Assembly (NCBI GenBank): GCA_965637545.1
Contig: OZ281497.1
Coordinates: 17,732,001-17,796,000 of the forward strand
From: Phallusia mammillata
Taxonomy: Eukaryota
Length of the DNA stretch: 64,000 nucleotides
Direction: 5' to 3'
This document shows positions 33,933 to 45,900 of the stretch, in pieces. The position numbers were made by a program, and so were the translations under genes. The first letter of the stretch is position 1; every line of letters starts with the position of its first letter. The notes below the pieces were generated by a model, which ran no database searches, was not told where the DNA came from, and saw nothing but the letters and a program-made list of their open reading frames with translations.

Positions 33933-34995
33933 ACGTATACTGATATCAACGGCAAAATTTATCACAAAGCATCCGCAAGATGGCAGTATCGGTCCAGTGG
34001 TGTGTGGATGGTTACGGACGTCAGTAAAATCACAATATCAATTTCGACCAATTCGGTTGTGTGCCAAATATGTTCGTTGCCATAAAGGGTTGGAAAGCAA
34101 ACTCCCATTTTTTTTACTTCTCACATTAAGCTAGTTGCTCATGAAATATTTTAACCGGTTTATTGCTGCAGTTCATACACGGGCAAAACACGCATGTGCA
34201 TGAATGCTAGAAGATATGCATTTGGGTTAAGGACCCTAAACATCTGATACTATTTTGTTCAAGCCATTGTAGCCTTTAATGGGCGATAAAAAATTCATGA
34301 AATCGACCAAAATCGTGTGAGGCTATTTACAGAAGCGTTTACAATCAATTTCAACTGGACCAAAATGCCGATTTATTATTGTGCGTTGACTGCAATTAAC
34401 CAGCAACCCAGAACTTCCTTTACCATTGTGATGAAAAATTTGTTTTTCTCAATCACGGTGGTTTCCCGTGCAACCGCCTACTGTGACGTCATTGTTGTGT
34501 GTGCGGCTGCAAGTAGGCTGTGCTGTGGGCAGGGGTTGTCTAAGACTCAAAACCATATGCTTGTCGCTTTTAGCTATGCCAGCTGTTTGTTTAAATCGTG
34601 TTATGCTGGTCTCAGCCGGAACTGAGTCCACTTTGTTTGTTTTCGTGAATTTTATTTCATTTCTAATCAGTTTTTTTTGTTTCTGCGCTTGTCAACGTGG
34701 AAGTTTTTTGCCTTGTTTATTGTTTGGTGAGCAAGCTTCGCATGAAATATTTCGTCGACTCTGTTTTACGTGACTGCTGCAACTACGGTGCACGCTTGGC
34801 GTTAGAAAAATGCAATCGTCTTAATGTACCGCTAATAATAAAAATCCTCGATTCAGAAGACTCTTCTCTTGTCGTCACACCCAAACAGGTCCTGTACACT
34901 TATGCTTGTCCCGAATATAAGAGATTAATTTTACGGTCGTCAGGTTTCTTTTTATTTAGATCCTCCAAAAAATTATATATAATACATTTATTGTG

Positions 34996-35147
34996 TACGG
35001 TGACCCATAAGGGCAAAAAGTTTAAATCGCGAGATATATTTTAAAATCGACAACTACATTCCGATCGGGATTTCAATGTTCGACGAACGGCATTCAAAAT
35101 TCGCCGACCGGGATTTCAATTTTTCCCTATCGGGATTTCTATATTGG
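34996..35147 (+). mobile_element. Left inverted repeat of a putative composite element, partner of 41826-42007
   Basis: The terminal 21-mer tacggtgacccataagggcaa matches the reverse complement of 41987-42007 at 19/21. 35039-35076 is a perfect 38-nt inverted match to 41919-41956. It has four ~22-bp ccgatcgggatttcaatattcg-like subrepeats. Confidence 0.8.
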
Positions 35148-35817
35148 ATGAGAGAAGGTTTTATTGCAATATCCTCCAATAACGTGTATATTTTGCTCCT
35201 AGGTTTGTGACAAACTGAACAAAAGAAGATAAAAACTATTAGTATTACCGTATTTATTCGGTTGTATATAAATTTTCCGATTTGTATAAAGCGACTTATA
35301 AAGATTTTACCCATCCATCACACCGATATTATTTCTACACCCATACTTTTGGATTGGTTTCGCTTTCCAAACACTTTTGCTATACGCTCTGCTGGGTCAA
35401 TTACTTGCGTGATACTATGTAGCAACATAAAGAAGTTTTAGTACCAAACATCACAAAATGCGGCTTACATTATTTTTGGAACCTTAACAGCCACATTGAC
35501 AATTAAGTAAGTACGGCTTTTGTCTGATTTTAGACGTTAACTGAATTAAACAAAAGCAAATACAACTCGTCGCAAAGCATTTTGGTAATTACGCTATAAA
35601 AATTTAACTGGGTATAAGGCTCGTAGTTAGGCATTAATAAATTTTTGTTATTTTAGGATCCGAATTTTTTAATTTTAGCATCATAAGTGTCGTATAAACC
35701 AATAGACAACCTTAGCAAAACATATATTCCCCGAGTAAACACTCTTGTTAGTATTTATTTACAGCTATTTTACAGTAAACCGCAAAAACCACCAGATGAT
35801 TGGGAAAAATTGTGCAT

Positions 35818-37431
35818 TCAGTCGTTTTTCTTGAGTTTTCGAAGTTTAATGTTAATGCCGTTTTCTGATCGCAATATAAGCCTTGGGATCATCCTGGGTT
35901 TTGGAGTTTCCTCGTCAACAAAAAGTTCGAATTTGCGCAGGATCAGACTTATTGTCACTTTCAATTCGTTCATTGCAAAAGTTTTGCCAATGCAATTGCG
36001 AGGACCGGCTGAAAACGCAACAAATGCTGTCGGGTGCATTTTCGCAACATTTTCGGGCAAAAATCGATCTGGATCGTACTGTTCCGGATTATCCCACACC
36101 TCTTGATTTCTATGAACGGCCCACAGATTAACCAGCACTGTGGTGTTTGGATAAACATCCATTTTACCACCCGGACTGCCTTTGTTAGCAAAAGTCATTT
36201 TTTCTTCCGGTGACCTTGCGATGACCTGTACAGGAGTATGCAGTCTTAAGCTTTCTTTGATGCACATCGTCAAGTATAATAGCTTGTTAATATCACCCCA
36301 TTCCATCTCTTCTTTGTCACCCATAACATCAAAAATCTCTTCGCGACAGCGTTGTTGGTAACCAGGATGTCGTGCCAAGTTGTAGAGAATCCACGAAATT
36401 GCGCTGGATGTTGTGTCATGCCCTTCAAACAGAAATGTGTCGACCTCATCTCGTATCTCACTGTCGTTTAAACCCTTCCCTTCGTCATCTTTCGATCGCA
36501 ACAAGATATCAATAAAGTCCAAACGGCCTTTCTTCTTTGTGCCAATATCATTGTAGTCAAAATCCAGCGGTTTCTGGTCTTCAGGTGTCAAATGAGACAA
36601 AGCAACTCTTCTTTCTTTGGTAAGTCTTTCTGCTTCCGAATGCACGTAATCCAGAGCTCGTTTAAATCGACGCCCAGGCGGACTGAGCCAAAACACCCAG
36701 TCGATTTGTAATAACACGCTGTTAACACGATCCACAACAATTTCAGCCAGATCAGTTACCGCTTGCACGTAACGATTTTCTGAATCCATCTGGCAGTTAG
36801 TTTCCGTCGACATTGCGCACTGAAGCATGACGTCCAAGGTCATCTGGGCTACGTCAGAGCTCACTTCGATCATTGCATTTTCTTTTCTTGCCTCCCATTT
36901 GGCTATCATAACTGAGGCGCAGTGATTGTAGACTTTCATGTAAGATTTCAGGACTTGGAAGTGAAAAGCGGACGTCAACAGCTTTCGATGACGTTTCCAC
37001 TTGTCTCCCGATGACGTCAGTAAACCGTCACCAATCCAAGGTCGCAAATATCTGTAGACAAACTCATCTTTTGGGGCTGAACTCAATAGTACTGTGCCGA
37101 CCGTAGTTGGCCTGTAGGGCTCGACAAACACTTTTACAGGTCCAACCCAAGTCACTAACATGTCTCCGCATTTTCGTACCCAATCAAGTCGGCATTTAAA
37201 ACCTTTCTCATCCGGTGTAAGAAGTTGCAAATGACCCCAGAACGGATGACGGGGTGGTGAACATCCTCTACTACTTAAGTCTGCGCTTTCCCTGTACGCT
37301 AAGTACAGAGGGCGTATCCAATGCTGGAAAATGTACACGCATGCTAAAAGGAACACGGTATCGCCAAGTAGAGAAGAAAAAATGTAACCAGTCCCACTAT
37401 TCAAGAACAACGGAGGCAAATCTGAAAACAT
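35818..37431 (-). CDS. CYP4: Cytochrome P450 family 4 (CYP4F-like), single coding exon, 537 aa
   Basis: Uninterrupted ORF from ATG 37431 to stop 35818. N-terminal hydrophobic anchor, PP..HPFWGHL, I-helix EVDTFLFEGHDTT, KESLR (ExxR), DPDRFLPE, heme motif FSAGPRNCIG. AATAAA on the minus strand at 35754-35759. Confidence 0.97.
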   Translation of the reverse strand: MFSDLPPLFLNSGTGYIFSSLLGDTVFLLACVYIFQHWIRPLYLAYRESADLSSRGCSPPRHPFWGHLQLLTPDEKGFKCRLDWVRKCGDMLVTWVGPVKVFVEPYRPTTVGTVLLSSAPKDEFVYRYLRPWIGDGLLTSSGDKWKRHRKLLTSAFHFQVLKSYMKVYNHCASVMIAKWEARKENAMIEVSSDVAQMTLDVMLQCAMSTETNCQMDSENRYVQAVTDLAEIVVDRVNSVLLQIDWVFWLSPPGRRFKRALDYVHSEAERLTKERRVALSHLTPEDQKPLDFDYNDIGTKKKGRLDFIDILLRSKDDEGKGLNDSEIRDEVDTFLFEGHDTTSSAISWILYNLARHPGYQQRCREEIFDVMGDKEEMEWGDINKLLYLTMCIKESLRLHTPVQVIARSPEEKMTFANKGSPGGKMDVYPNTTVLVNLWAVHRNQEVWDNPEQYDPDRFLPENVAKMHPTAFVAFSAGPRNCIGKTFAMNELKVTISLILRKFELFVDEETPKPRMIPRLILRSENGINIKLRKLKKND

Positions 37432-38819
37432 CTTAAGCACCTGTTAACAACATATTTGCATTTTAAAAACCATAACATAAATGTTTCTTGTGGAGTTTTG
37501 TAGTGTATAGTACTTGGTGTAATTTCATATTGGCAAAGCCGTTTGAGTAAAAACCATTAGAATTTATGATAAACCTAAACCAGGGCTACTCAAATGGCGG
37601 ACCGCGGTCCATATCCGGACCTTTGGGGCGTTGGATGTGGACCTCGACGGTCTTTTAATTAAATGCGACCGCATACACTATATTGTGTGTTAAGTTCTTG
37701 ATCGTTGCTATGTAGGGACAGTTGACTCGAATGCGCATAGCGATTCTCGGAGTACTGTGAGGAACCTGAAGTATTTCCAAAATCTTTAAAGGTCAGATTG
37801 TGCAATTAACTTTCTGACAACAAAATGGTCCTTTATTCCACTACACTGTTAACAAAACGGCAATTGTTTGCGCACAATTGCATCTATGACGTAATAAACT
37901 GTATTTTGTATGTCGTTGTTGAGCCTTATGTTGCCGTTATAAATCTAATATATTGTCTTACGAATATCAGCTAGTAATTGAGTCTCATTTATTTCACACG
38001 CGAGCCATAAAGATCGCCTATTCTAAAGTAAAGTACAACGCCACTAGGGCTATTATCAAACAAATAATTATTTGAATATTGCAAAGTGTTGCAAACAACA
38101 CTGTTCGCAGATGACACTAATCTCATCATGACTGACAGGAGTTTAAGCAATCTGCAAATCAAAATAAACCAAGAATTAAAAAAAAATAGTTCAATGGTTA
38201 AGAGTAAATAAACTGACCCTAAACATTAGCAAAACATCTTACATGCTTGTGACAAAGCAGCCAAAAAATGATAACTTCTCGCTTCATCTTGGCAACAACA
38301 CTATATCTCGTCAATCAAAAATAAAATATCTAGGTGTTATTATAGATGACAAATTTAACTGGTCCGGGCACATAACTCAACTTCAAACACAACTTGCTAA
38401 ATATTCTGGTCTAATGTATAAACTAAGAAAATACGTTGATTTAAAAACCCTTAAAATTTTATATCATAGCCTTGTCTACTCAAAACTGCAATATGCCATC
38501 AGCTGCTGGGGGAGTGGGAATGCACCTGAACTTCACCAATTAAAAGTGTTGCAAAATAATATCTTGCGAATTATAACCTATAACAAAAGAATCTGCCACA
38601 TGACACCTATTTACAGAAAACTAAAAACTTTAAAACTTACCGATATCAACAAACTTCAAACAGCACAAATTATGCACAAATTTCATCACCATAAACTCCC
38701 CTCAACATTCGATGAGTTTTTCACAAAAATTTCACAGGTTCATTCCCACTCCACGAGACATGCTGATGGCGAAAACCTCTTTATCCCTAGATTTCAAACA
38801 ACCCTCGCCCAAAAGTCTC

Positions 38820-39553
38820 CCAGATTGGAAAGTTTTATTTTTGCGCGGAGGATATATTTTTTGTCAAAATAATTGCGCGGATTTTTGCGCGGAATTACAA
38901 TTTTCTGCGCGGATCGATATACTTTTGATTGACAGGTGGATTTAACGATTAACGTAATTTGTATGTAACGCCTGCAAGACTATCCAGCCGACAAAAAGAA
39001 CAACTAAATAAAGCAACAAACACGACGAGTCTTCAGTTTTGCTCTATTGCGCACGCAGCTGTTGCGCTAGATTCTACAATTTCTCATTTTCATAACGATT
39101 CATACATTTTGCTCATTTGTTTTGTGGGGGATAGTTTTTGATTGCCAAACTGCTCTTAACTGTTTTTAATTATTTGTCACACAGAAAACATTATTTCATG
39201 TAACTTGCCCAGCCGACAGTCACTTTAATAGTCAAACTACGTCCTAAAAATACAGATAAATGTACTTTTAACGACTACGTTAGCGAAACAGAAATGTTAT
39301 TTCAAGCGTGACGATCGGTAAGTTTTGATGTGCTTGACTGATTTACGTGGATTGTTCGCGAAATAAGGCTTGTGACGACATAGAACTTCATTGTAAAACG
39401 AAAATATAAAAGTTTAAAGAAAGTTTATTATAGTTACCTACAAAAGCTGTGCTAAGTTGCGCGGACAACATTTTTTTTTGCGCGGATTACACGTAAAAAG
39501 CCTAAATTTGCGCGGATTACAAGGGGAAATCCAAAATATTCTTTCCAATCTGG
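38820..39553. mobile_element. 734-bp MITE inserted in the LINE ORF
   Basis: Perfect 13-bp TIR ccagattggaaag / ctttccaatctgg. Perfect 8-bp TSD aaagtctc (38812-38819 and 39554-39561). Seven tgcgcgga subterminal motifs. Removing it restores the LINE frame (QKSL-HYRG). Confidence 0.92.
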
Positions 39554-39854
39554 AAAGTCTCTACATTACCGTGGTCCAAAAATTTGGAACAATATTCCTA
39601 CCAAAATTAAAAACCTTGGTTTACACTCATTTAAAGTTCAATTCAAGGCCACCTTATTGCAAAACTATCAATGTTGAAGGTCAAACCTGGTCAAACCAAT
39701 ATTGTTTACAAATCAAACCACGTGAATGTATCCTTGACTCCCTTATCAGTAGTTGGTTGTTATACGCACAACGGTTCGTGTTTAACAAGTATGTGATTTT
39801 GATAGTGTAATGCAAAGTTTGGATTATTTGTCTCGTGTTCATTATTTACACATG

Positions 39855-39858
<4 letters not shown>

Positions 39859-39888
<30 letters not shown>
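39859..39888. repeat. (TA)15 microsatellite
   Basis: Read directly from the sequence. Confidence 0.95.
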
Positions 39889-39892
<4 letters not shown>

Positions 39893-39930
39893 TATTTTTT
39901 TATCTTTATCCTTTGTCACAACTGTGCTGT

Positions 39931-40190
39931 TTTTTTAATTACTTCGACATCTTTGATGTTGTGTTACTTCGTGGGTCCATTTGTTGTTGTTGTTGTTTTA
40001 ATTACTTCGACGTCTTTGATGTTGNNNNNNNNNNNNNNNNNNNNNNNNNNNNNNNNNNNNNNNNNNNNNNNNNNNNNNNNNNNNNNNNNNNNNNNNNNNN
40101 NNNNNNNNNNNNNNNNNNNNNNNNNNNNNNNNNNNNNNNNNNNNNNNNNNNNNNNNNNNNNNNNNNNNNNNNNNNNNNNTTGCTTCGCGG
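39931..40190. repeat. Minisatellite (~64-bp unit) running into a 156-N assembly gap (40025-40180)
   Basis: ttttaattacttcgac(a/g)tctttgatgttg occurs twice immediately before the Ns. Confidence 0.75.
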
Positions 40191-41191
40191 CTCCGAAGTT
40201 CAACACCACACTGCCAATTCTGCTGCATTGTCTTGTATTTTTTTATCTTCCTTAGTTTATTTCCATTACTTTTTTTCTTTTGTGCAACAATAATCTTGTA
40301 ACTTTATATGTTTAATTACGTTGTTTTGGGGGCATCTTGACTCGAAAACCGAAAGGTTAATCGATGCCTCCCTACTCAATTTAATATTTGCGTTTGTGGG
40401 TAAAAATAAACCATTGAATTGAATTGAATATTTGAAATATTTAATTATTTGGAAATTTATCAAATAATATTTTACACAACTTTAAATTATCAAATATTTT
40501 TTTCCTATGCAGTAAACCTTGATGTAGGTGCAAAATCAATTTAATTGAATACATTGGTGACATTTTTATGAAATGAAAATTAAACAGAAAAACTACAATA
40601 TCTGTGGAATTACATATCTCTACAGATGTATTATTTTAAACAGAAAAAATAGACTAGATTTAATGAATAAGAGCTTACAATTTTTGTTTAGTATTTTCAA
40701 CTATCCTTATGTTTAATAACGGCTGTTGGCCTTATTTCCCCTCATATCTATTTTTAATTGTTTGAATCGAATGGAAAACAAAATTATTTGATTATCTAAA
40801 AACCTTTATATGATAACAGCCCTAAATGCAACTGCATTTTATATAATTAGAAATATACTTAGCAGAAGACTAGTTAAATAATTATTCCATTAATGGAGCA
40901 TCTGGCATAGATACATGAGCTACAGCGATCTACAACGCAAACACAGTGGAATGTATTAGTCCACTGTATATATACAGAAGACGAGTCAGCAATATTTGGA
41001 AAAAAGACATTTACTCGAAACAAGAAGTGGCAAGTTACACTCGACTTGGCACCGATATTAGTCTTGAACTTGCAGTTGTAGCGAAGCATGAAACATTGCG
41101 TGCAAACCAAATACGGGCTTGTAGACCTACGTGGCGCTATGCATAGTTTTCCCCCCTTGTTACTTTAGTAAAAATACCAAGTTCTTGTTAC

Positions 41192-41446
41192 TTTAATAAA
41201 AAACAAAGTGCCTAGGATGTAGAATAAAACGTCATTTTATTCAAACAGACGTTTCGACAAAAACAATTGTCATTATCAGTGAAAATATTTCAGATATTTA
41301 TCATCAGGTATTTTCACCAGAGCCACTATATTGCCAATATAGTGGCTCTGTTTTCACTGATGATGGCAATTGTTTTTGTGGAAACGTCTGTTTAATAAAA
41401 TAAGTACGTTTTATTCTACATCCTTGGCAATTTGGTTTTTATTAAA
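41192..41446. ncRNA. Long palindrome with two inverted minimal type-I hammerhead ribozyme motifs, probably derived from a Penelope-like element
   Basis: Arms 41192-41285 and 41351-41446 are inverted copies. A perfect 15-bp hairpin lies between them (41318-41350). Plus strand 41357-41388 reads CTGATGA-T-GGCAAttgttttTGTG-GAAAC-GTC; minus strand 41279-41248 reads CTGATAA-T-GACAAttgttttTGTC-GAAAC-GTC. Flanked by the 13-bp direct repeat aagttcttgttac (41179-41191 and 41478-41490). Confidence 0.6.
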
Positions 41447-41825
41447 GCTACTATTAAAGTCCGTGTCTTGTGTACCTAAGTTCTTGTTACATAATTCAAA
41501 TGTTCCTTTGGCAGATATACCGTGTTATGTCATGAAATGAAGTAACAGTCGTTGTGTCAATAGCGAGAAGTAAATCAATGTTTAGTGCCCAATTCAAGCT
41601 TTTGTTTTGCTGACAGAAAAATTCGGCTTGGACAAATGTGTTTATCTTGGACCCCGATTCTCCCCATTAGCTACAACCAAAATAGGCGAATACATGTTGC
41701 ATTTGCATTACTTATGCAGATGTGTCCGGACCATTAGTGTTTTTACTTTTGCTATCTGGACCTTTCACAAAACTAATTGAGTAGCTCTGACCTAAACCGT
41801 TCGTGTTCTGAAGCTAATTGATCGC

Positions 41826-42007
41826 CGAATATTGAAATCCCGATCGGGAAAAATTGTAGTGCGATCGTCGAATTTTGAAATGCCGATAGTCGAATATTAA
41901 AATCCAGATCGGCGAATGTTGAAATCCCGATCGGAATGTAGTTGTCGATTTTAAAAAATATTTCGGGATTTAAGTTTTATCGCAAGTTGCCCTTATGGGC
42001 TACCGTA
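41826..42007 (-). mobile_element. Right inverted repeat of the putative composite element, partner of 34996-35147
   Basis: Ends ttgcccttatgggctaccgta and has five ~22-bp subrepeats. Outer flanks are attgtg (34990-34995) and attgta (42008-42013), a 5/6 match. Confidence 0.8.
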
Positions 42008-42922
42008 ATTGTATGACCTTACAGCCTCTGGTAGTTTAGTCTGGTATCATTTGGGCATGGTTATACAAGTATAGCGTCACAATTGTAATGAGAAATCTGA
42101 ACTATCGTTCCGTAAACATTCGTAGAAATCTATTAGTGGTACAAATAACCTTTCCCAAATTCCAAATCGTAGTATTAGCCATTACAGTGGATTATGCCCA
42201 TATTAGTTTTGCTAGGGCATTACGTACTAGCCATAAAAAGTTGGAAGTCCTTGTTGTCTTGGCAACCAACATCATGATACTGGATAACTTATGACGAACG
42301 ACAACAGGCGATGATTACACGGCCCGAAACGATTTACTACGTCACTTGTGGAATACTTTGCGCGGCAAATCATTGTTCGATGAGATTCCACTTATTAGAA
42401 ATCGATAATTGTTAAGCGCTCTTGGTCGATAAGATAAAACGTCAGTTCGGGTTAACTGAACTCGGACGCAAACACATTTAAACGACGCACATCGAAACAG
42501 ACAGTTGAAAAGACAGAATGTGCACTGGGGTATAGAAGTATATCGGTGTGCACATTAGTACCGCTAATTGCGATTTTTAGTGTATTCAATGAAATGTATC
42601 AAGTCAGTTTTTTTAGAAGACAGTTTTGCAATCGTTTCGTTCCGCAAATAGTTTGAGTTTGAAAATCGCCAGAGTTGTCAGGTTAGCTACTAGTCGTTGT
42701 GTCGTCGCTTTCATTACGACGTGTAAAATTTTGGACAATTTGTGTTTGTGCTATGAAATTTGCTGGAGAATATTGTCAAATAATTACATTGTTATTTCAA
42801 CATTTATATGTTTTCGCAGCATATTGTGATACAAATAAGGTCTTAATTAAAAGGAAATATGACGGTGCTCTTAACAATAATAAGCTTTCTTCCAAAAAAT
42901 TGTTTCACAATCCACTAAAAGT

Positions 42923-45900
42923 ATGAAGGTTTTCCATTTTCTATTACTGCTTATGCTTACAGGTAAAGGAACATTATTGCAACCATAAAAATGTTTTTTT
43001 TAATTACAAATTATACATTTTTCAGTGTCCACTGCATTTGGGCAAGAGGACCCCGAAGCACCCCCGGCTGATCCTGAGAACCCTGAAGAGCCGCCTACTG
43101 AGGATCCAGGACCCACGGAACCCCCACCACCACCTTGTGAGGGTGAGTTTTACGCACCGGAGGGGAGCATCAGTTCACCGGATTACCCCCAGAACTACCC
43201 CAACAAACGTAACTGCATCTACAGAATATTGACTGACAACATTATCAACGTAAGTTAGCATTTATGTGTAGATTTGATTCAAATATATATTGCACAAGTT
43301 TTAAATTTGATAGGGTTACAAAAAATATGAGCGACCTAGTTTCTTTCTTATCACATTTAGTTATAGAAGGGAAAAAGGATCAAATAATTTACAAGTTTTG
43401 TTTGCAGTTGATGATTTTAATAGTTTCTCATGATTTAATTTTTTTTGGATTTGTTTTCACCCGTTATCGTAGATCTACTTTGAAACATTCGACCTGGAAT
43501 TTAGTGAGGAATGTCGCTACGACTGGCTGGAGTTTATTTTTAATGCTACGAAACGCGTTAAGAGTTCTCAAAAGTAAGACTATTGGCTGCTTCCACAGCA
43601 GTGACAGGTGCATAGCGAAATCGATTTGTCTTGACGAAGGATACTCAAAAAATAACACAAAAACATCCAAAAAAATGTATTTGCCATAAATTTGTAAACA
43701 AACAAACTAACACATAAACATCGGGAATTTAAACTCTTCAGAAATATATCGATTTTGCTACACACCTTGTATGTGTCTGTTTTAGATGTTGATATCGTGT
43801 TTTATTTTTGATGTTAAGTTGTATTTCGAATCGTTTGAGATCGAGGAAAGCGAGGACTGCACATACGATTTTCTAAACATTGTCTTTAACGCCACCTCGC
43901 GGAACCCAGATACAAATAGGTATAGTTGCCAAGCAACCGGCACGACATGCGGGGTGACCTAGTTCGCTTGCTATGCTTAAAAACATGTTCTGCAATAAAA
44001 CAAGTTGCGATAGGCAGTTTCTTGACGCAAAAACGTTGAATTTTCCGTCACTAGCACTTTGCCACAGCTTATGGAGTAACGCTTTGCGGTTTATGCGACT
44101 AACAAGTTGATGGTTGCCGCTTCGGGGGCTAAGCCACAAATCGCCCAAGTAGTTCTGTATCTGCCATTAACCTTTACGCCGAATAAGCTGCAATGCTTTA
44201 TTCCGTAACGCTGAAATAGTCATAGTGCTTTGCCCTGTGTTAAAAATTGAATAAAAGGTGTGCGTGTTATATGAACATTTTGTATAATTGCCATGGGTAT
44301 TTATATTTTGCGTCAGATATTGCGGGAGAGGACTTGGCAAGGTGAATGATGGACACTTGCGCGGGAATGGTCCACTGATTGTTGGCTTCGTTAGCGATGA
44401 TTCGGATAACATGAAAGGCTTCAAGTTTGATTTTAAATGTAAGCTTCAGATATTTATCTTTCAATGAACCTTAAAGTGGCTGCTACCAACAGTCTCCTAG
44501 TGAATATTTTTTTCTACTTTTATTTGCTTTGTGTCGTTGTGTTAGAGGCAAAACACATTCATTTTGAAACGTTATGAAAATGTGTTTTCATTGTGTTTGT
44601 GCATTGGGGATTAAATTTGTTTGTTTTCAGTTGAACTCGAAGGTCCAGACCCGTGCGAGTCCGGTCCTTGTCAGAACGGGGGAGAATGTCAAACGTTCAC
44701 TGGATATTACAAGTGTTCCTGCCCAAATGGCTACGCAGGATTTAATTGCGAAATAGGTGTGTAGTAGTAACAAAAAACAAAATATTTTTGATTATTTGTT
44801 CTTTTAATACATTTCGTTTTGTTGCACAATGACCGGACAAAGGCAAATTTTCAATATTCGAACTGTCGCCTGATTGTCGAAAAATGTTACATGTTACAAA
44901 AAAGGAAAAAATAGCTCATTTAATTTACATTTTCCTTGGCATCATAAACGAAAGCTCAAAAATCTTAATTTGTGTGTCGTTGTGTACAGACAAGGATGAG
45001 TGCGCATCAATTCCATGCCAGAATGGCGGGGAGTGTGTCGATGAACTTGATGGCTATACTTGTGAATGTATCAACGAGTTTGACGGAACCCACTGCGAAA
45101 CAGGTAACCAACTTTATCGAAAGAACATGCAAAGGATGAAATATATATTTCTAATGTTATTTTTCAGCACCACAACCTTGTCTTTCTGATCCTTGTCAGA
45201 ACGGTGGGATTTGTGTGGACAGAGTTACCGATTACGTGTGTTCTTGTCCGAAAGACTTTCATGGCGACCACTGCGAGGAATCAAGTAAGCCTGATAAATA
45301 TTTTGCAACAGTGTGAGTTGCACAAATGAAGTATTTTGTTTAACCTTGGCTGATCGTGCTTTTTCAAACCCTGAGTAATTGTTCAAAAGGTATGCCATCT
45401 GCATGGACAAAAAACAGAAAAATGCGGTACAACCGTATGCCTATATTCGTGTTGAAATTTATTTTTTATACAGTTCGAAACTATTCATCATAGTATATTC
45501 AGTTTAAGCTGCAGATAGTGCACAGTGTTTCGAGCTAAAAATTCTCATCAGTGCAGCTGGTGACGAGAGATATGCCGTATTGACTAGTGTTGCTGCACTG
45601 TACCTTATATAGGTCGAAACAGTGTGGATTGACTGCAGCTTATCATTTATTGGCTTAATGCTTTTACATATTCAGTTTATTATGTACAAATAACCAATTT
45701 GTGAAACATAACCCAGTTCCCACTCCGCCTCCTCCACCAACCACCACAACCACTACTGTTGCCACGACAACAATCCATCCTGAAGCTCCTGATGCATCAA
45801 CCACTGAAACACCAGGAGGTGATTCGTCTGATCCTGCTGATTCTGTTGATCCAGCTGATCCCGAAGATGTTGGAGAACCTGGAAAAAAAGATGACAATCT

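What the first reader, a model, noticed from the sequence alone, without database searches (positions are those of the whole stretch)
34996..42007. Intact intronless CYP4 enclosed by long inverted repeats: candidate cargo-carrying (Pack/foldback-like) transposon
Seen: two inward-facing inverted repeats (34996-35147 and 41826-42007) with 19/21 terminal identity, a perfect 38-nt core and 4-5 internal 22-bp subrepeats. Outer flanks are attgtg / attgta, or alternatively TA on both sides. Removing the later hAT insertion (37581-41797) leaves a ~2.8-kb unit: left IR, ~670 bp with a polyA signal, the complete 537-aa CYP4 ORF, only ~180 bp of upstream DNA, then the right IR. Every other gene here has 4-28 coding introns; this one has none. 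Inference: a processed or captured P450 mobilised between TIRs, perhaps using the right IR as promoter. That would be a route for spreading detoxification or lipid-hydroxylase genes.
Basis: partly seen in the sequence, partly recalled or inferred. Interest (0 to 1): 0.82.

Follow-up and report, generated by a model that had tools for sequence, protein, structure and literature searches.

The report
P450 gene inside a transposon-like inverted-repeat pair
In a sea-squirt genome, an intact single-exon fat-oxidising enzyme gene (CYP4) lies between two matching inverted repeats that look like the two ends of one low-copy jumping element, but I could not show that the gene ever moved with them.

Summary
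Two inward-facing repeats (34996-35147 and 41826-42007) share a 19/21 terminus, a perfect 38-nt core and 22-bp subrepeats, and occur only here in the 64-kb window. Their outer flanks are ATTGTG and ATTGTA (chance about 0.006). Neither repeat has a second end of its own.

Between them lies a complete 537-aa CYP4 ORF with all P450 motifs, and a later hAT-type insertion (37581-41789) with a perfect 8-bp duplication. The N gap (40025-40179) lies inside that insertion, so it does not touch the gene or the repeats.

Public contigs from three DNA samples keep the left junction. The repeat has about ten copy-equivalents, not thousands. The outside flank is single copy, while the interior is about 3-5x.

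The extra CYP copies encode Phallusia mammillata protein P0001 (92% aa identity). They are also intronless in DNA and are the mainly expressed form. dN/dS is about 0.12 and dS 0.19 over 157 codons.

Best reading: one old, apparently fixed Pack-TIR/foldback-like element with a whole CYP4 gene inside (about 0.55). Mobilisation as a unit is unproven (about 0.3). "Freshly processed" is not supported, because intron loss predates the duplication. Earlier notes of this scan did not record this repeat or this gene on other DNA.

The parts
34990..34995 (.). Left candidate target-site duplication, ATTGTG
   Evidence: 5/6 identical to 42008-42013, chance about 0.006. The alternative is a TA duplication if the element starts at CGGTG.
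34996..35147 (+). Left inverted repeat: 21-nt terminus, 38-nt core starting at 35039, 21/22-bp subrepeats at 35061-35141
   Evidence: The junction with the left flank is present in contigs of three DNA samples (pieces 34000-35068).
35148..35817 (-). 670-bp 3' flank/UTR of the CYP4 gene. Minus-strand AATAAA lies at 35754-35759, about 60 nt after the stop codon.
   Evidence: sequence. Depth is about 2-4x single copy, and another copy has a 93-nt skip at 35227-35321.
35818..37431 (-). Single-exon CYP4 (CYP4F-like) gene, 537 codons plus stop
   Evidence: The motifs EGHDTT, ESLR, PDRF and FSAGPRNCIG are read in the translation. dN/dS is 0.115 against the paralogue over codons 381-537.
37432..37580 (-). 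149 bp upstream of the ATG. A possible splice or trans-splice acceptor (ttgttaacAG) lies at 37441-37442, 9 nt before the ATG.
   Evidence: sequence only, not tested.
37581..41789 (.). Later hAT-type non-autonomous insertion with nested repeats, flanked by the 8-bp duplication ACCTAAAC (37573-37580 and 41790-41797). It contains the N gap 40025-40179.
   Evidence: In one search, 27-36 contigs per DNA run end at 37581, and depth there is 60-100x.
38080..38872 (+). 5'-truncated LINE-like reverse-transcriptase tail nested in the hAT insert
   Evidence: FADD motif read. ORF 38243-38872 has no Pfam hit. Contigs end at 38080.
41798..41825 (-). 28 bp between the hAT duplication and the right repeat. 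With 37432-37580 this makes the original 177-bp upstream spacer.
41826..42007 (-). Right inverted repeat, with 5.3 copies of the 22-bp subrepeat
42008..42013 (.). Right candidate target-site duplication, ATTGTA

Best explanation
The region 34996-42007 is one old, non-autonomous, TIR-bounded DNA element of Pack-TIR/foldback-like build. Its internal sequence is a complete single-exon CYP4 gene with about 670 bp of 3' and 177 bp of 5' flank.

It sits in the intergenic DNA between a receptor-type tyrosine-phosphatase gene, whose transcript ends near 34857, and a CUB-EGF gene that starts near 43025. Both neighbours are on the + strand.

Each 152/182-bp arm has a unique terminus, a conserved core and 22-bp subterminal repeats. 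By analogy with other TIR elements, these subrepeats would be binding sites for a transposase supplied in trans; that step is inferred.

The gene is one of roughly four genomic copies of a lineage-specific intronless CYP4. The other copies encode Phallusia mammillata P0001 and are the mainly expressed ones. The window copy stays intact under purifying selection. A hAT-type element later inserted 150 bp upstream of its ATG and separated it from the right arm.

Shown: the repeat pair, the TSD-like flanks, the absence of second ends, the low copy number, the fixed left junction, the intact constrained gene, and intronless paralogues.

Inferred: that the pair inserted as one element. How the gene got inside is open: capture by gap repair or template switching, or insertion of the gene into a resident element. 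Whether the unit later moved is also open.
For: - The repeat pair is unique in the window with sharp termini.
- The flanks match 5/6, P about 0.006.
- No second end exists for either arm beyond chance: best 14/25 against a shuffle mean of 14.5.
- Summed depth in the repeat bin is 8.7x, 6.5x and 10.7x the flank in three DNA runs, against 59-100x for the hAT end. The outside flank 34000-34984 is exactly 1x, while the 3' flank and CDS are about 2-5x.
- The left flank-to-repeat junction is present with 0-4 mismatches in three samples from three studies.
- The gene is p450 at 5e-108 and 92% identical to P0001 with no gaps.
- The paralogue contig, with the listed differences applied, translates exactly to P0001 over codons 381-537.
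- dS is 0.19 and dN/dS 0.115. Arm-to-arm distance is 0.156 over the best 78-nt ungapped arms, so the arms and the gene duplication could be of similar age.
Against: - No other IR-CYP-IR locus, empty site or transposase-bearing relative was seen.
- The duplication is imperfect (5/6), and a TA reading is also possible.
- Neither 6 bp nor TA assigns a superfamily, and 9-10 bp, as in foldback/Mutator elements, is not present.
- The arms are only 73-86% alike, with indels.
- Depth figures are sums over contigs and give only rough copy numbers.
Confidence: 0.55

Rival explanations
1. Multicopy version. All or most of the roughly four CYP4 copies are IR-CYP-IR units that spread by transposition, so the element amplified the gene.
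For: In runs X1 and X4 the depths fit two arms per CYP copy: the repeat bin is 8.7-10.7x and the interior about 3-5x. The repeated segment stops inside the arm, because the outside flank is 1x. Another copy of the 3' flank exists with a 93-nt skip. Arm divergence (0.156) is close to the paralogue dS (0.19).
Against: The same depths fit a separate small repeat family plus paralogues that share only the gene and its flank. In X2 the repeat bin (6.5x) is lower than two arms per copy would predict. No flank of any P0001 copy was read. The P0001 RNA contig ends at 35823, where the graph branches, and no RNA contig lies on the window's 3' flank.
Confidence: 0.3
2. Two independent insertions or remnants of the same low-copy element happen to flank an ordinary resident single-exon CYP4 gene in inverted orientation. 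The flank match is chance.
For: Intronless genes are often noted in this genome. Foldback-type elements exist in it (other notes, unchecked). The duplication is imperfect.
Against: Each copy would need to have lost its other end: no second end is found. The outward-facing termini and the 5/6 flank match (P about 0.006) would both be coincidence. With only about 10 arm-equivalents in the genome, two landing 2.8 kb apart is unlikely.
Confidence: 0.12
3. This is not a transposon. It is a local inverted duplication or a boundary of segmental duplication, and the repeats are by-products of rearrangement.
For: A large spacer-less palindrome is noted a few kb before the window (unchecked). The interior is multicopy.
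Against: The arms have sharp ends with a distinct terminus, core and tandem 22-bp subrepeats, a TSD-like flank, and about 10 arm-equivalents genome-wide. These are features of TIR elements, not of simple inverted duplication.
Confidence: 0.06

Closest known systems
Ssk-FB4, a multicopy Pack-TIR of Drosophila melanogaster (Tan et al. 2021, PMC8277862)
   Same: An almost complete protein-coding gene lies between long, internally repetitive inverted arms of a non-autonomous element. The gene family is low copy, and the copies are transcribed and evolving as protein genes.
   Different: FB4 arms are about 700 bp with 9-10-bp duplications, and three loci with distinct duplications prove transposition. 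Here the arms are 152-182 bp, the candidate duplication is 6 bp (or TA), only one locus was seen, and the host is a tunicate.
Pack-MULE / Pack-TYPE elements of plants (PMC8903248)
   Same: TIR-bounded non-autonomous elements whose interior is host-gene DNA rather than a transposase.
   Different: Plant Pack elements mostly carry gene fragments of a few hundred bp and have 9-bp duplications. Here the interior is a whole functional-looking gene with its flanks.
Foldback-like elements with internally repetitive TIRs (Galileo, P superfamily, PMC3573991; Tetris, PMC4079207)
   Same: Long arms made partly of short tandem subrepeats.
   Different: In those elements the arms dominate the element. Galileo has 7-bp duplications (from my own knowledge). 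No match of that length is present here.
Vertebrate CYP4F/4B/4T omega-hydroxylases and the Ciona 'leukotriene-B4 omega-hydroxylase 3-like' protein P0004
   Same: 41-49% identity over the full length. CYP4 I-helix and heme motifs are present. The gene is sister to Ciona P0004 in the tree (98/96).
   Different: It is single-exon, whereas a Clavelina homologue has at least 8 coding exons. It sits on a long stem branch of 0.77. The substrate is unknown.

Membership tests
Pack-TIR (criteria of Tan et al. 2021, PMC8277862 Methods) | The internal sequence is flanked by two TIRs of the same element that include the element's termini (at least 10 bp). | tested here: met
   The arms are homologous to each other and include a 19/21 terminus. 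No family consensus exists to compare with.
Pack-TIR (criteria of Tan et al. 2021, PMC8277862 Methods) | The internal sequence is 100-5000 bp of host origin with no transposase. | tested here: met
   About 2.46 kb after removing the hAT insert. The only long ORF is the CYP4.
Pack-TIR (criteria of Tan et al. 2021, PMC8277862 Methods) | A unique parental copy at 90% identity or more that is not itself flanked by TIR elements. | tested here: inconclusive
   A paralogue about 93% identical in the CDS exists at about 3x depth. Its flanks could not be read.
Pack-TIR (criteria of Tan et al. 2021, PMC8277862 Methods) | Not a retroduplicate, that is, not an intronless copy of a multi-exon parent. | tested here: inconclusive
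   The nearest paralogue is also intronless in DNA contigs over 35822-37281. The structure of the Ciona sister gene is not available.
TIR DNA transposon in general | A target-site duplication flanks the whole unit. | tested here: met
   ATTGTG and ATTGTA, 5/6, P about 0.006. It is imperfect, and a TA alternative exists.
TIR DNA transposon in general | Several copies at different loci with different duplications, or an empty site. | not testable with these tools
   Only summed depth is available. No whole-genome search is on hand.
Foldback / Mutator (FB4, NOF/Rehavkus type) | A 9-10-bp target-site duplication. | tested here: not met
   The flanks ATTTATTGTG and ATTGTATGAC do not match at 9-10 bp.
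Foldback / Mutator (FB4, NOF/Rehavkus type) | Long arms built of tandem subrepeats. | tested here: met
   22-bp units, 2.7 and 5.3 copies, though the arms are short (152-182 bp).
Cytochrome P450 family 4 | P450 fold with the heme-thiolate motif FxxGxRxCxG and the CYP4 I-helix EGHDTT, and 40% identity or more to named CYP4 proteins. | tested here: met
   Pfam p450 at 5e-108. FSAGPRNCIG and FEGHDTT are read in the translation. Identity to CYP4F/4B/4T proteins is 41-47%.
Processed retrogene | Intronless, with a poly(A) relic, its own flanking duplication, and a multi-exon parent. | tested here: inconclusive
   The gene is intronless. No A-tract or duplication is seen in 35148-35817. No close multi-exon parent exists: the next relatives are 49% identical or less. 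A distant Clavelina homologue has at least 8 exons.

The most novel reading that the evidence does not exclude
A low-copy foldback-like DNA transposon in a tunicate carries a complete, selectively constrained CYP4 gene and has amplified it to about four genomic copies by transposition. That would be transposon-driven spread of a whole enzyme gene in a chordate relative, comparable only to Ssk-FB4 in flies.
Probability: 0.3. Interest if true: 0.75.

Novelty: new member of a known kind. Interest (0 to 1): 0.5.

Why it matters
Gene capture by cut-and-paste transposons is well documented in plants. In animals it usually involves fragments; Tan et al. 2021 list 370 cases in 100 genomes and one well-proven multicopy whole-gene case.

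A TIR element that encloses a whole, constrained P450 gene in a tunicate would be a rare animal example. If the other copies prove to be enclosed in the same way, it would show a direct route by which lipid-hydroxylase or detoxification genes multiply. The case is cheap to settle with the existing genome assembly.

Tried and rejected
- Exact-protein look-ups of the window CYP4, P0001 and Ciona P0004 for genomic context: none is on record.
- Scan of metagenome contigs for the repeat core: 0 hits.
The best 25-nt matches inside the unit equal the shuffled expectation. Rejected.
- A 9-10-bp (Mutator/foldback) or 7-8-bp (P/hAT) duplication: not present.
- A recent retrocopy: rejected, because the 7%-diverged paralogue is also intronless in DNA.
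- Other CYP4 copies or repeat copies in the window: none.
- Full-gene dN/dS was not possible, because only 27 of the 111 differences were printed.
Full report
**What is there**

The repeat finder, a pairwise alignment and blastn all show one inverted pair. The left arm is 34996-35147 on the + strand and the right arm is 41826-42007 on the - strand. They align over 181 columns at 73% identity with two indels (E 1e-27), and the best 78-nt arms are 86% alike.

The 21-nt outer terminus matches at 19/21. It has no other match in the 64-kb window at up to 3 mismatches, and 100 shuffles gave none. A perfect 38-nt core starts at 35039. It is followed by 21/22-bp tandem subrepeats, 2.7 copies on the left and 5.3 on the right. 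Similarity stops sharply at both outer ends.

The six bases outside are ATTGTG on the left and ATTGTA on the right. The chance of at least 5/6 is 0.006, both by base composition and from 200,000 random position pairs. Because the arms begin with TA, a TA duplication with the element starting at CGGTG cannot be excluded.

**The gap and the nested insertion**

The N run at 40025-40179 lies in tandem-repeat DNA inside a later insertion. It is not in the gene or the arms. I did not fill it.

That insertion spans 37581-41789. It has hAT-type ends (CAGGGCTACTCAA) and a perfect 8-bp duplication, ACCTAAAC, at 37573-37580 and 41790-41797. The matched ends tie the two sides of the gap to one insertion, although its true length is unknown.

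In public contigs, 27-36 contigs per DNA run end exactly at 37581, and depth there is 59-100 times single copy. So it belongs to a high-copy family. The insert holds a 5'-truncated LINE-like reverse-transcriptase tail (FADD motif, ORF 38243-38872) and other high-copy repeats.

**The gene**

The ORF at 35818-37431 (-) encodes 537 aa. It scores Pfam p450 at 5e-108 and carries the CYP4 I-helix (FEGHDTT), ESLR, PDRF and the heme loop FSAGPRNCIG (translation).

Its best database match is a Phallusia mammillata protein, P0001: 537 aa, 92% identity, no gaps. Everything else is 49% identical or less. In a tree, the window protein and P0001 are sisters (100/100) on a long stem of 0.77. Together they are sister to Ciona P0004 (98/96).

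A more distant Clavelina homologue has at least 8 coding exons in 3.2 kb. So multi-exon CYP4 genes do exist in ascidians.

The neighbours are multi-exon genes on the + strand:
- On the left is a receptor-type tyrosine phosphatase with two phosphatase domains. Its RNA contig ends at 34857, just after an AATAAA.
- On the right is a CUB-EGF gene that starts near 43025.

The unit is therefore intergenic, tail-to-tail with the phosphatase gene.

**Evidence from public runs (contigs only, laid on 34000-39900)**

1. Contigs from three DNA samples of three studies run from the left flank into the arm (34000-35068) with 0-4 mismatches. They break only at the 38-nt core. The left junction is therefore shared by all three samples, and no empty-site branch was listed.
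2. Summed depth in the bin that holds the arm is 8.7, 6.5 and 10.7 times the flank. That is about ten arm-equivalents, not thousands.
3. The flank up to 34984 is exactly 1x. The 3' flank is about 2-4x and the CDS about 3-5x or more. The repeated segment therefore begins within the arm.
4. A second CYP sequence, 5-10% different in DNA, lies at about 2.7-4 times single-copy depth. Its genomic pieces (35822-36453, 36424-36768, 36668-37281) overlap without interruption, so it too is intronless.
5. Applying the printed differences to the window reproduces P0001 exactly over codons 381-537, including all 7 amino-acid changes. The paralogue is therefore the P0001 gene, and the organism is P. mammillata or something very close to it.
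6. Over those 157 codons dS is 0.19, dN is 0.022 and dN/dS is 0.115. The distance between the two best arms is 0.156 over 78 nt, which is a similar age.
7. In a likely RNA run, the P0001 form makes a 1561-nt colinear contig at depth 34. The window copy gives only one 245-nt perfect piece at depth 3.4.
8. RNA-like runs hold only 0.10-0.26 of the window copy's words. This copy is weakly expressed at best.

**Interpretation**

The pair behaves as the two ends of one element. It is unique and outward-terminated. It is flanked by a TSD-like match. The family is also small.

I therefore read the region as a Pack-TIR/foldback-like non-autonomous element with a whole CYP4 gene inside (confidence about 0.55).

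First, intron loss predates the duplication, so "freshly processed" does not hold. I also saw no poly(A) relic or retrocopy duplication. Second, mobilisation as a unit is not shown. The depth pattern fits "every CYP copy has two arms". It fits equally [quoted passage not shown], which is the one-off capture route that Tan et al. 2021 find typical of single-copy Pack-TIRs. I put the multicopy reading at about 0.3.

The rivals are two independent remnants (about 0.12) and a non-transposon inverted duplication (about 0.06). Both are disfavoured by the termini, the flank match and the low copy number.

**Comparison with known systems**

The closest case is Ssk-FB4 of Drosophila. There, an almost complete gene lies between long, repetitive foldback arms, and three loci with different 9-10-bp duplications prove transposition. 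Here the arms are shorter, the candidate duplication is 6 bp or TA, and only one locus was seen. A 9-10-bp duplication is absent, so I do not file it as a foldback/Mutator element.

Other notes of this scan report NOF/Rehavkus-type foldback Mutator elements in the same genome. I did not test any link to them. The superfamily is unassigned, and no transposase lies in the window.

**Limits**

There was no whole-genome search. The single read-laying run did not reach the right arm. Contig depths are only rough copy numbers. dN/dS covers only the C-terminal 157 codons. The possible acceptor AG at 37441-37442, 9 nt before the ATG, and any promoter role of the right arm are untested.

Earlier notes of this scan did not record this repeat or this gene elsewhere.

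Noticed in passing
window 37581-37661 and 41789: The hAT-type ends belong to a high-copy family (about 60-100x depth). Most other copies diverge after the first 81 nt (19-22 contigs per run leave at 37661), so the 4.2-kb interior here is mostly nested foreign repeats.
   Followed up: partly
window 38728-39556: A very high-copy repeat, about 140-245x single-copy depth. Other copies join 38807 to 39556. The boundary at 38820 is marked by 10-11 contig ends per run.
   Followed up: no
window 41191-41447: Nested palindromic element (51- and 50-nt arms, 86-88% complementary) inside the hAT insert. It is the subject of another note of this scan (s1-395783).
   Followed up: no
window 34836-34857: The 3' end of the tyrosine-phosphatase transcript. 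A 2416-nt RNA contig stops at 34857, about 16 nt after an AATAAA and 138 bp before the left repeat.
   Followed up: partly
window 37441-37442 (minus strand): A pyrimidine-rich tract followed by AG lies 9 nt upstream of the CYP4 ATG. It could be a cis- or spliced-leader trans-splice acceptor, in which case the gene would have an upstream non-coding exon or an outron.
   Followed up: no
window 35039-35851 in run X2: Window-specific contigs in sample X2 have depth 17-18 against 30 for the flank, while one CDS piece has 49. This could reflect heterozygosity or copy-number difference at this locus in that individual.
   Followed up: no
window 35227-35321: Another genomic copy of the CYP4 3' flank, at single-copy depth in all three DNA runs, skips or replaces 93 nt here.
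   Followed up: no
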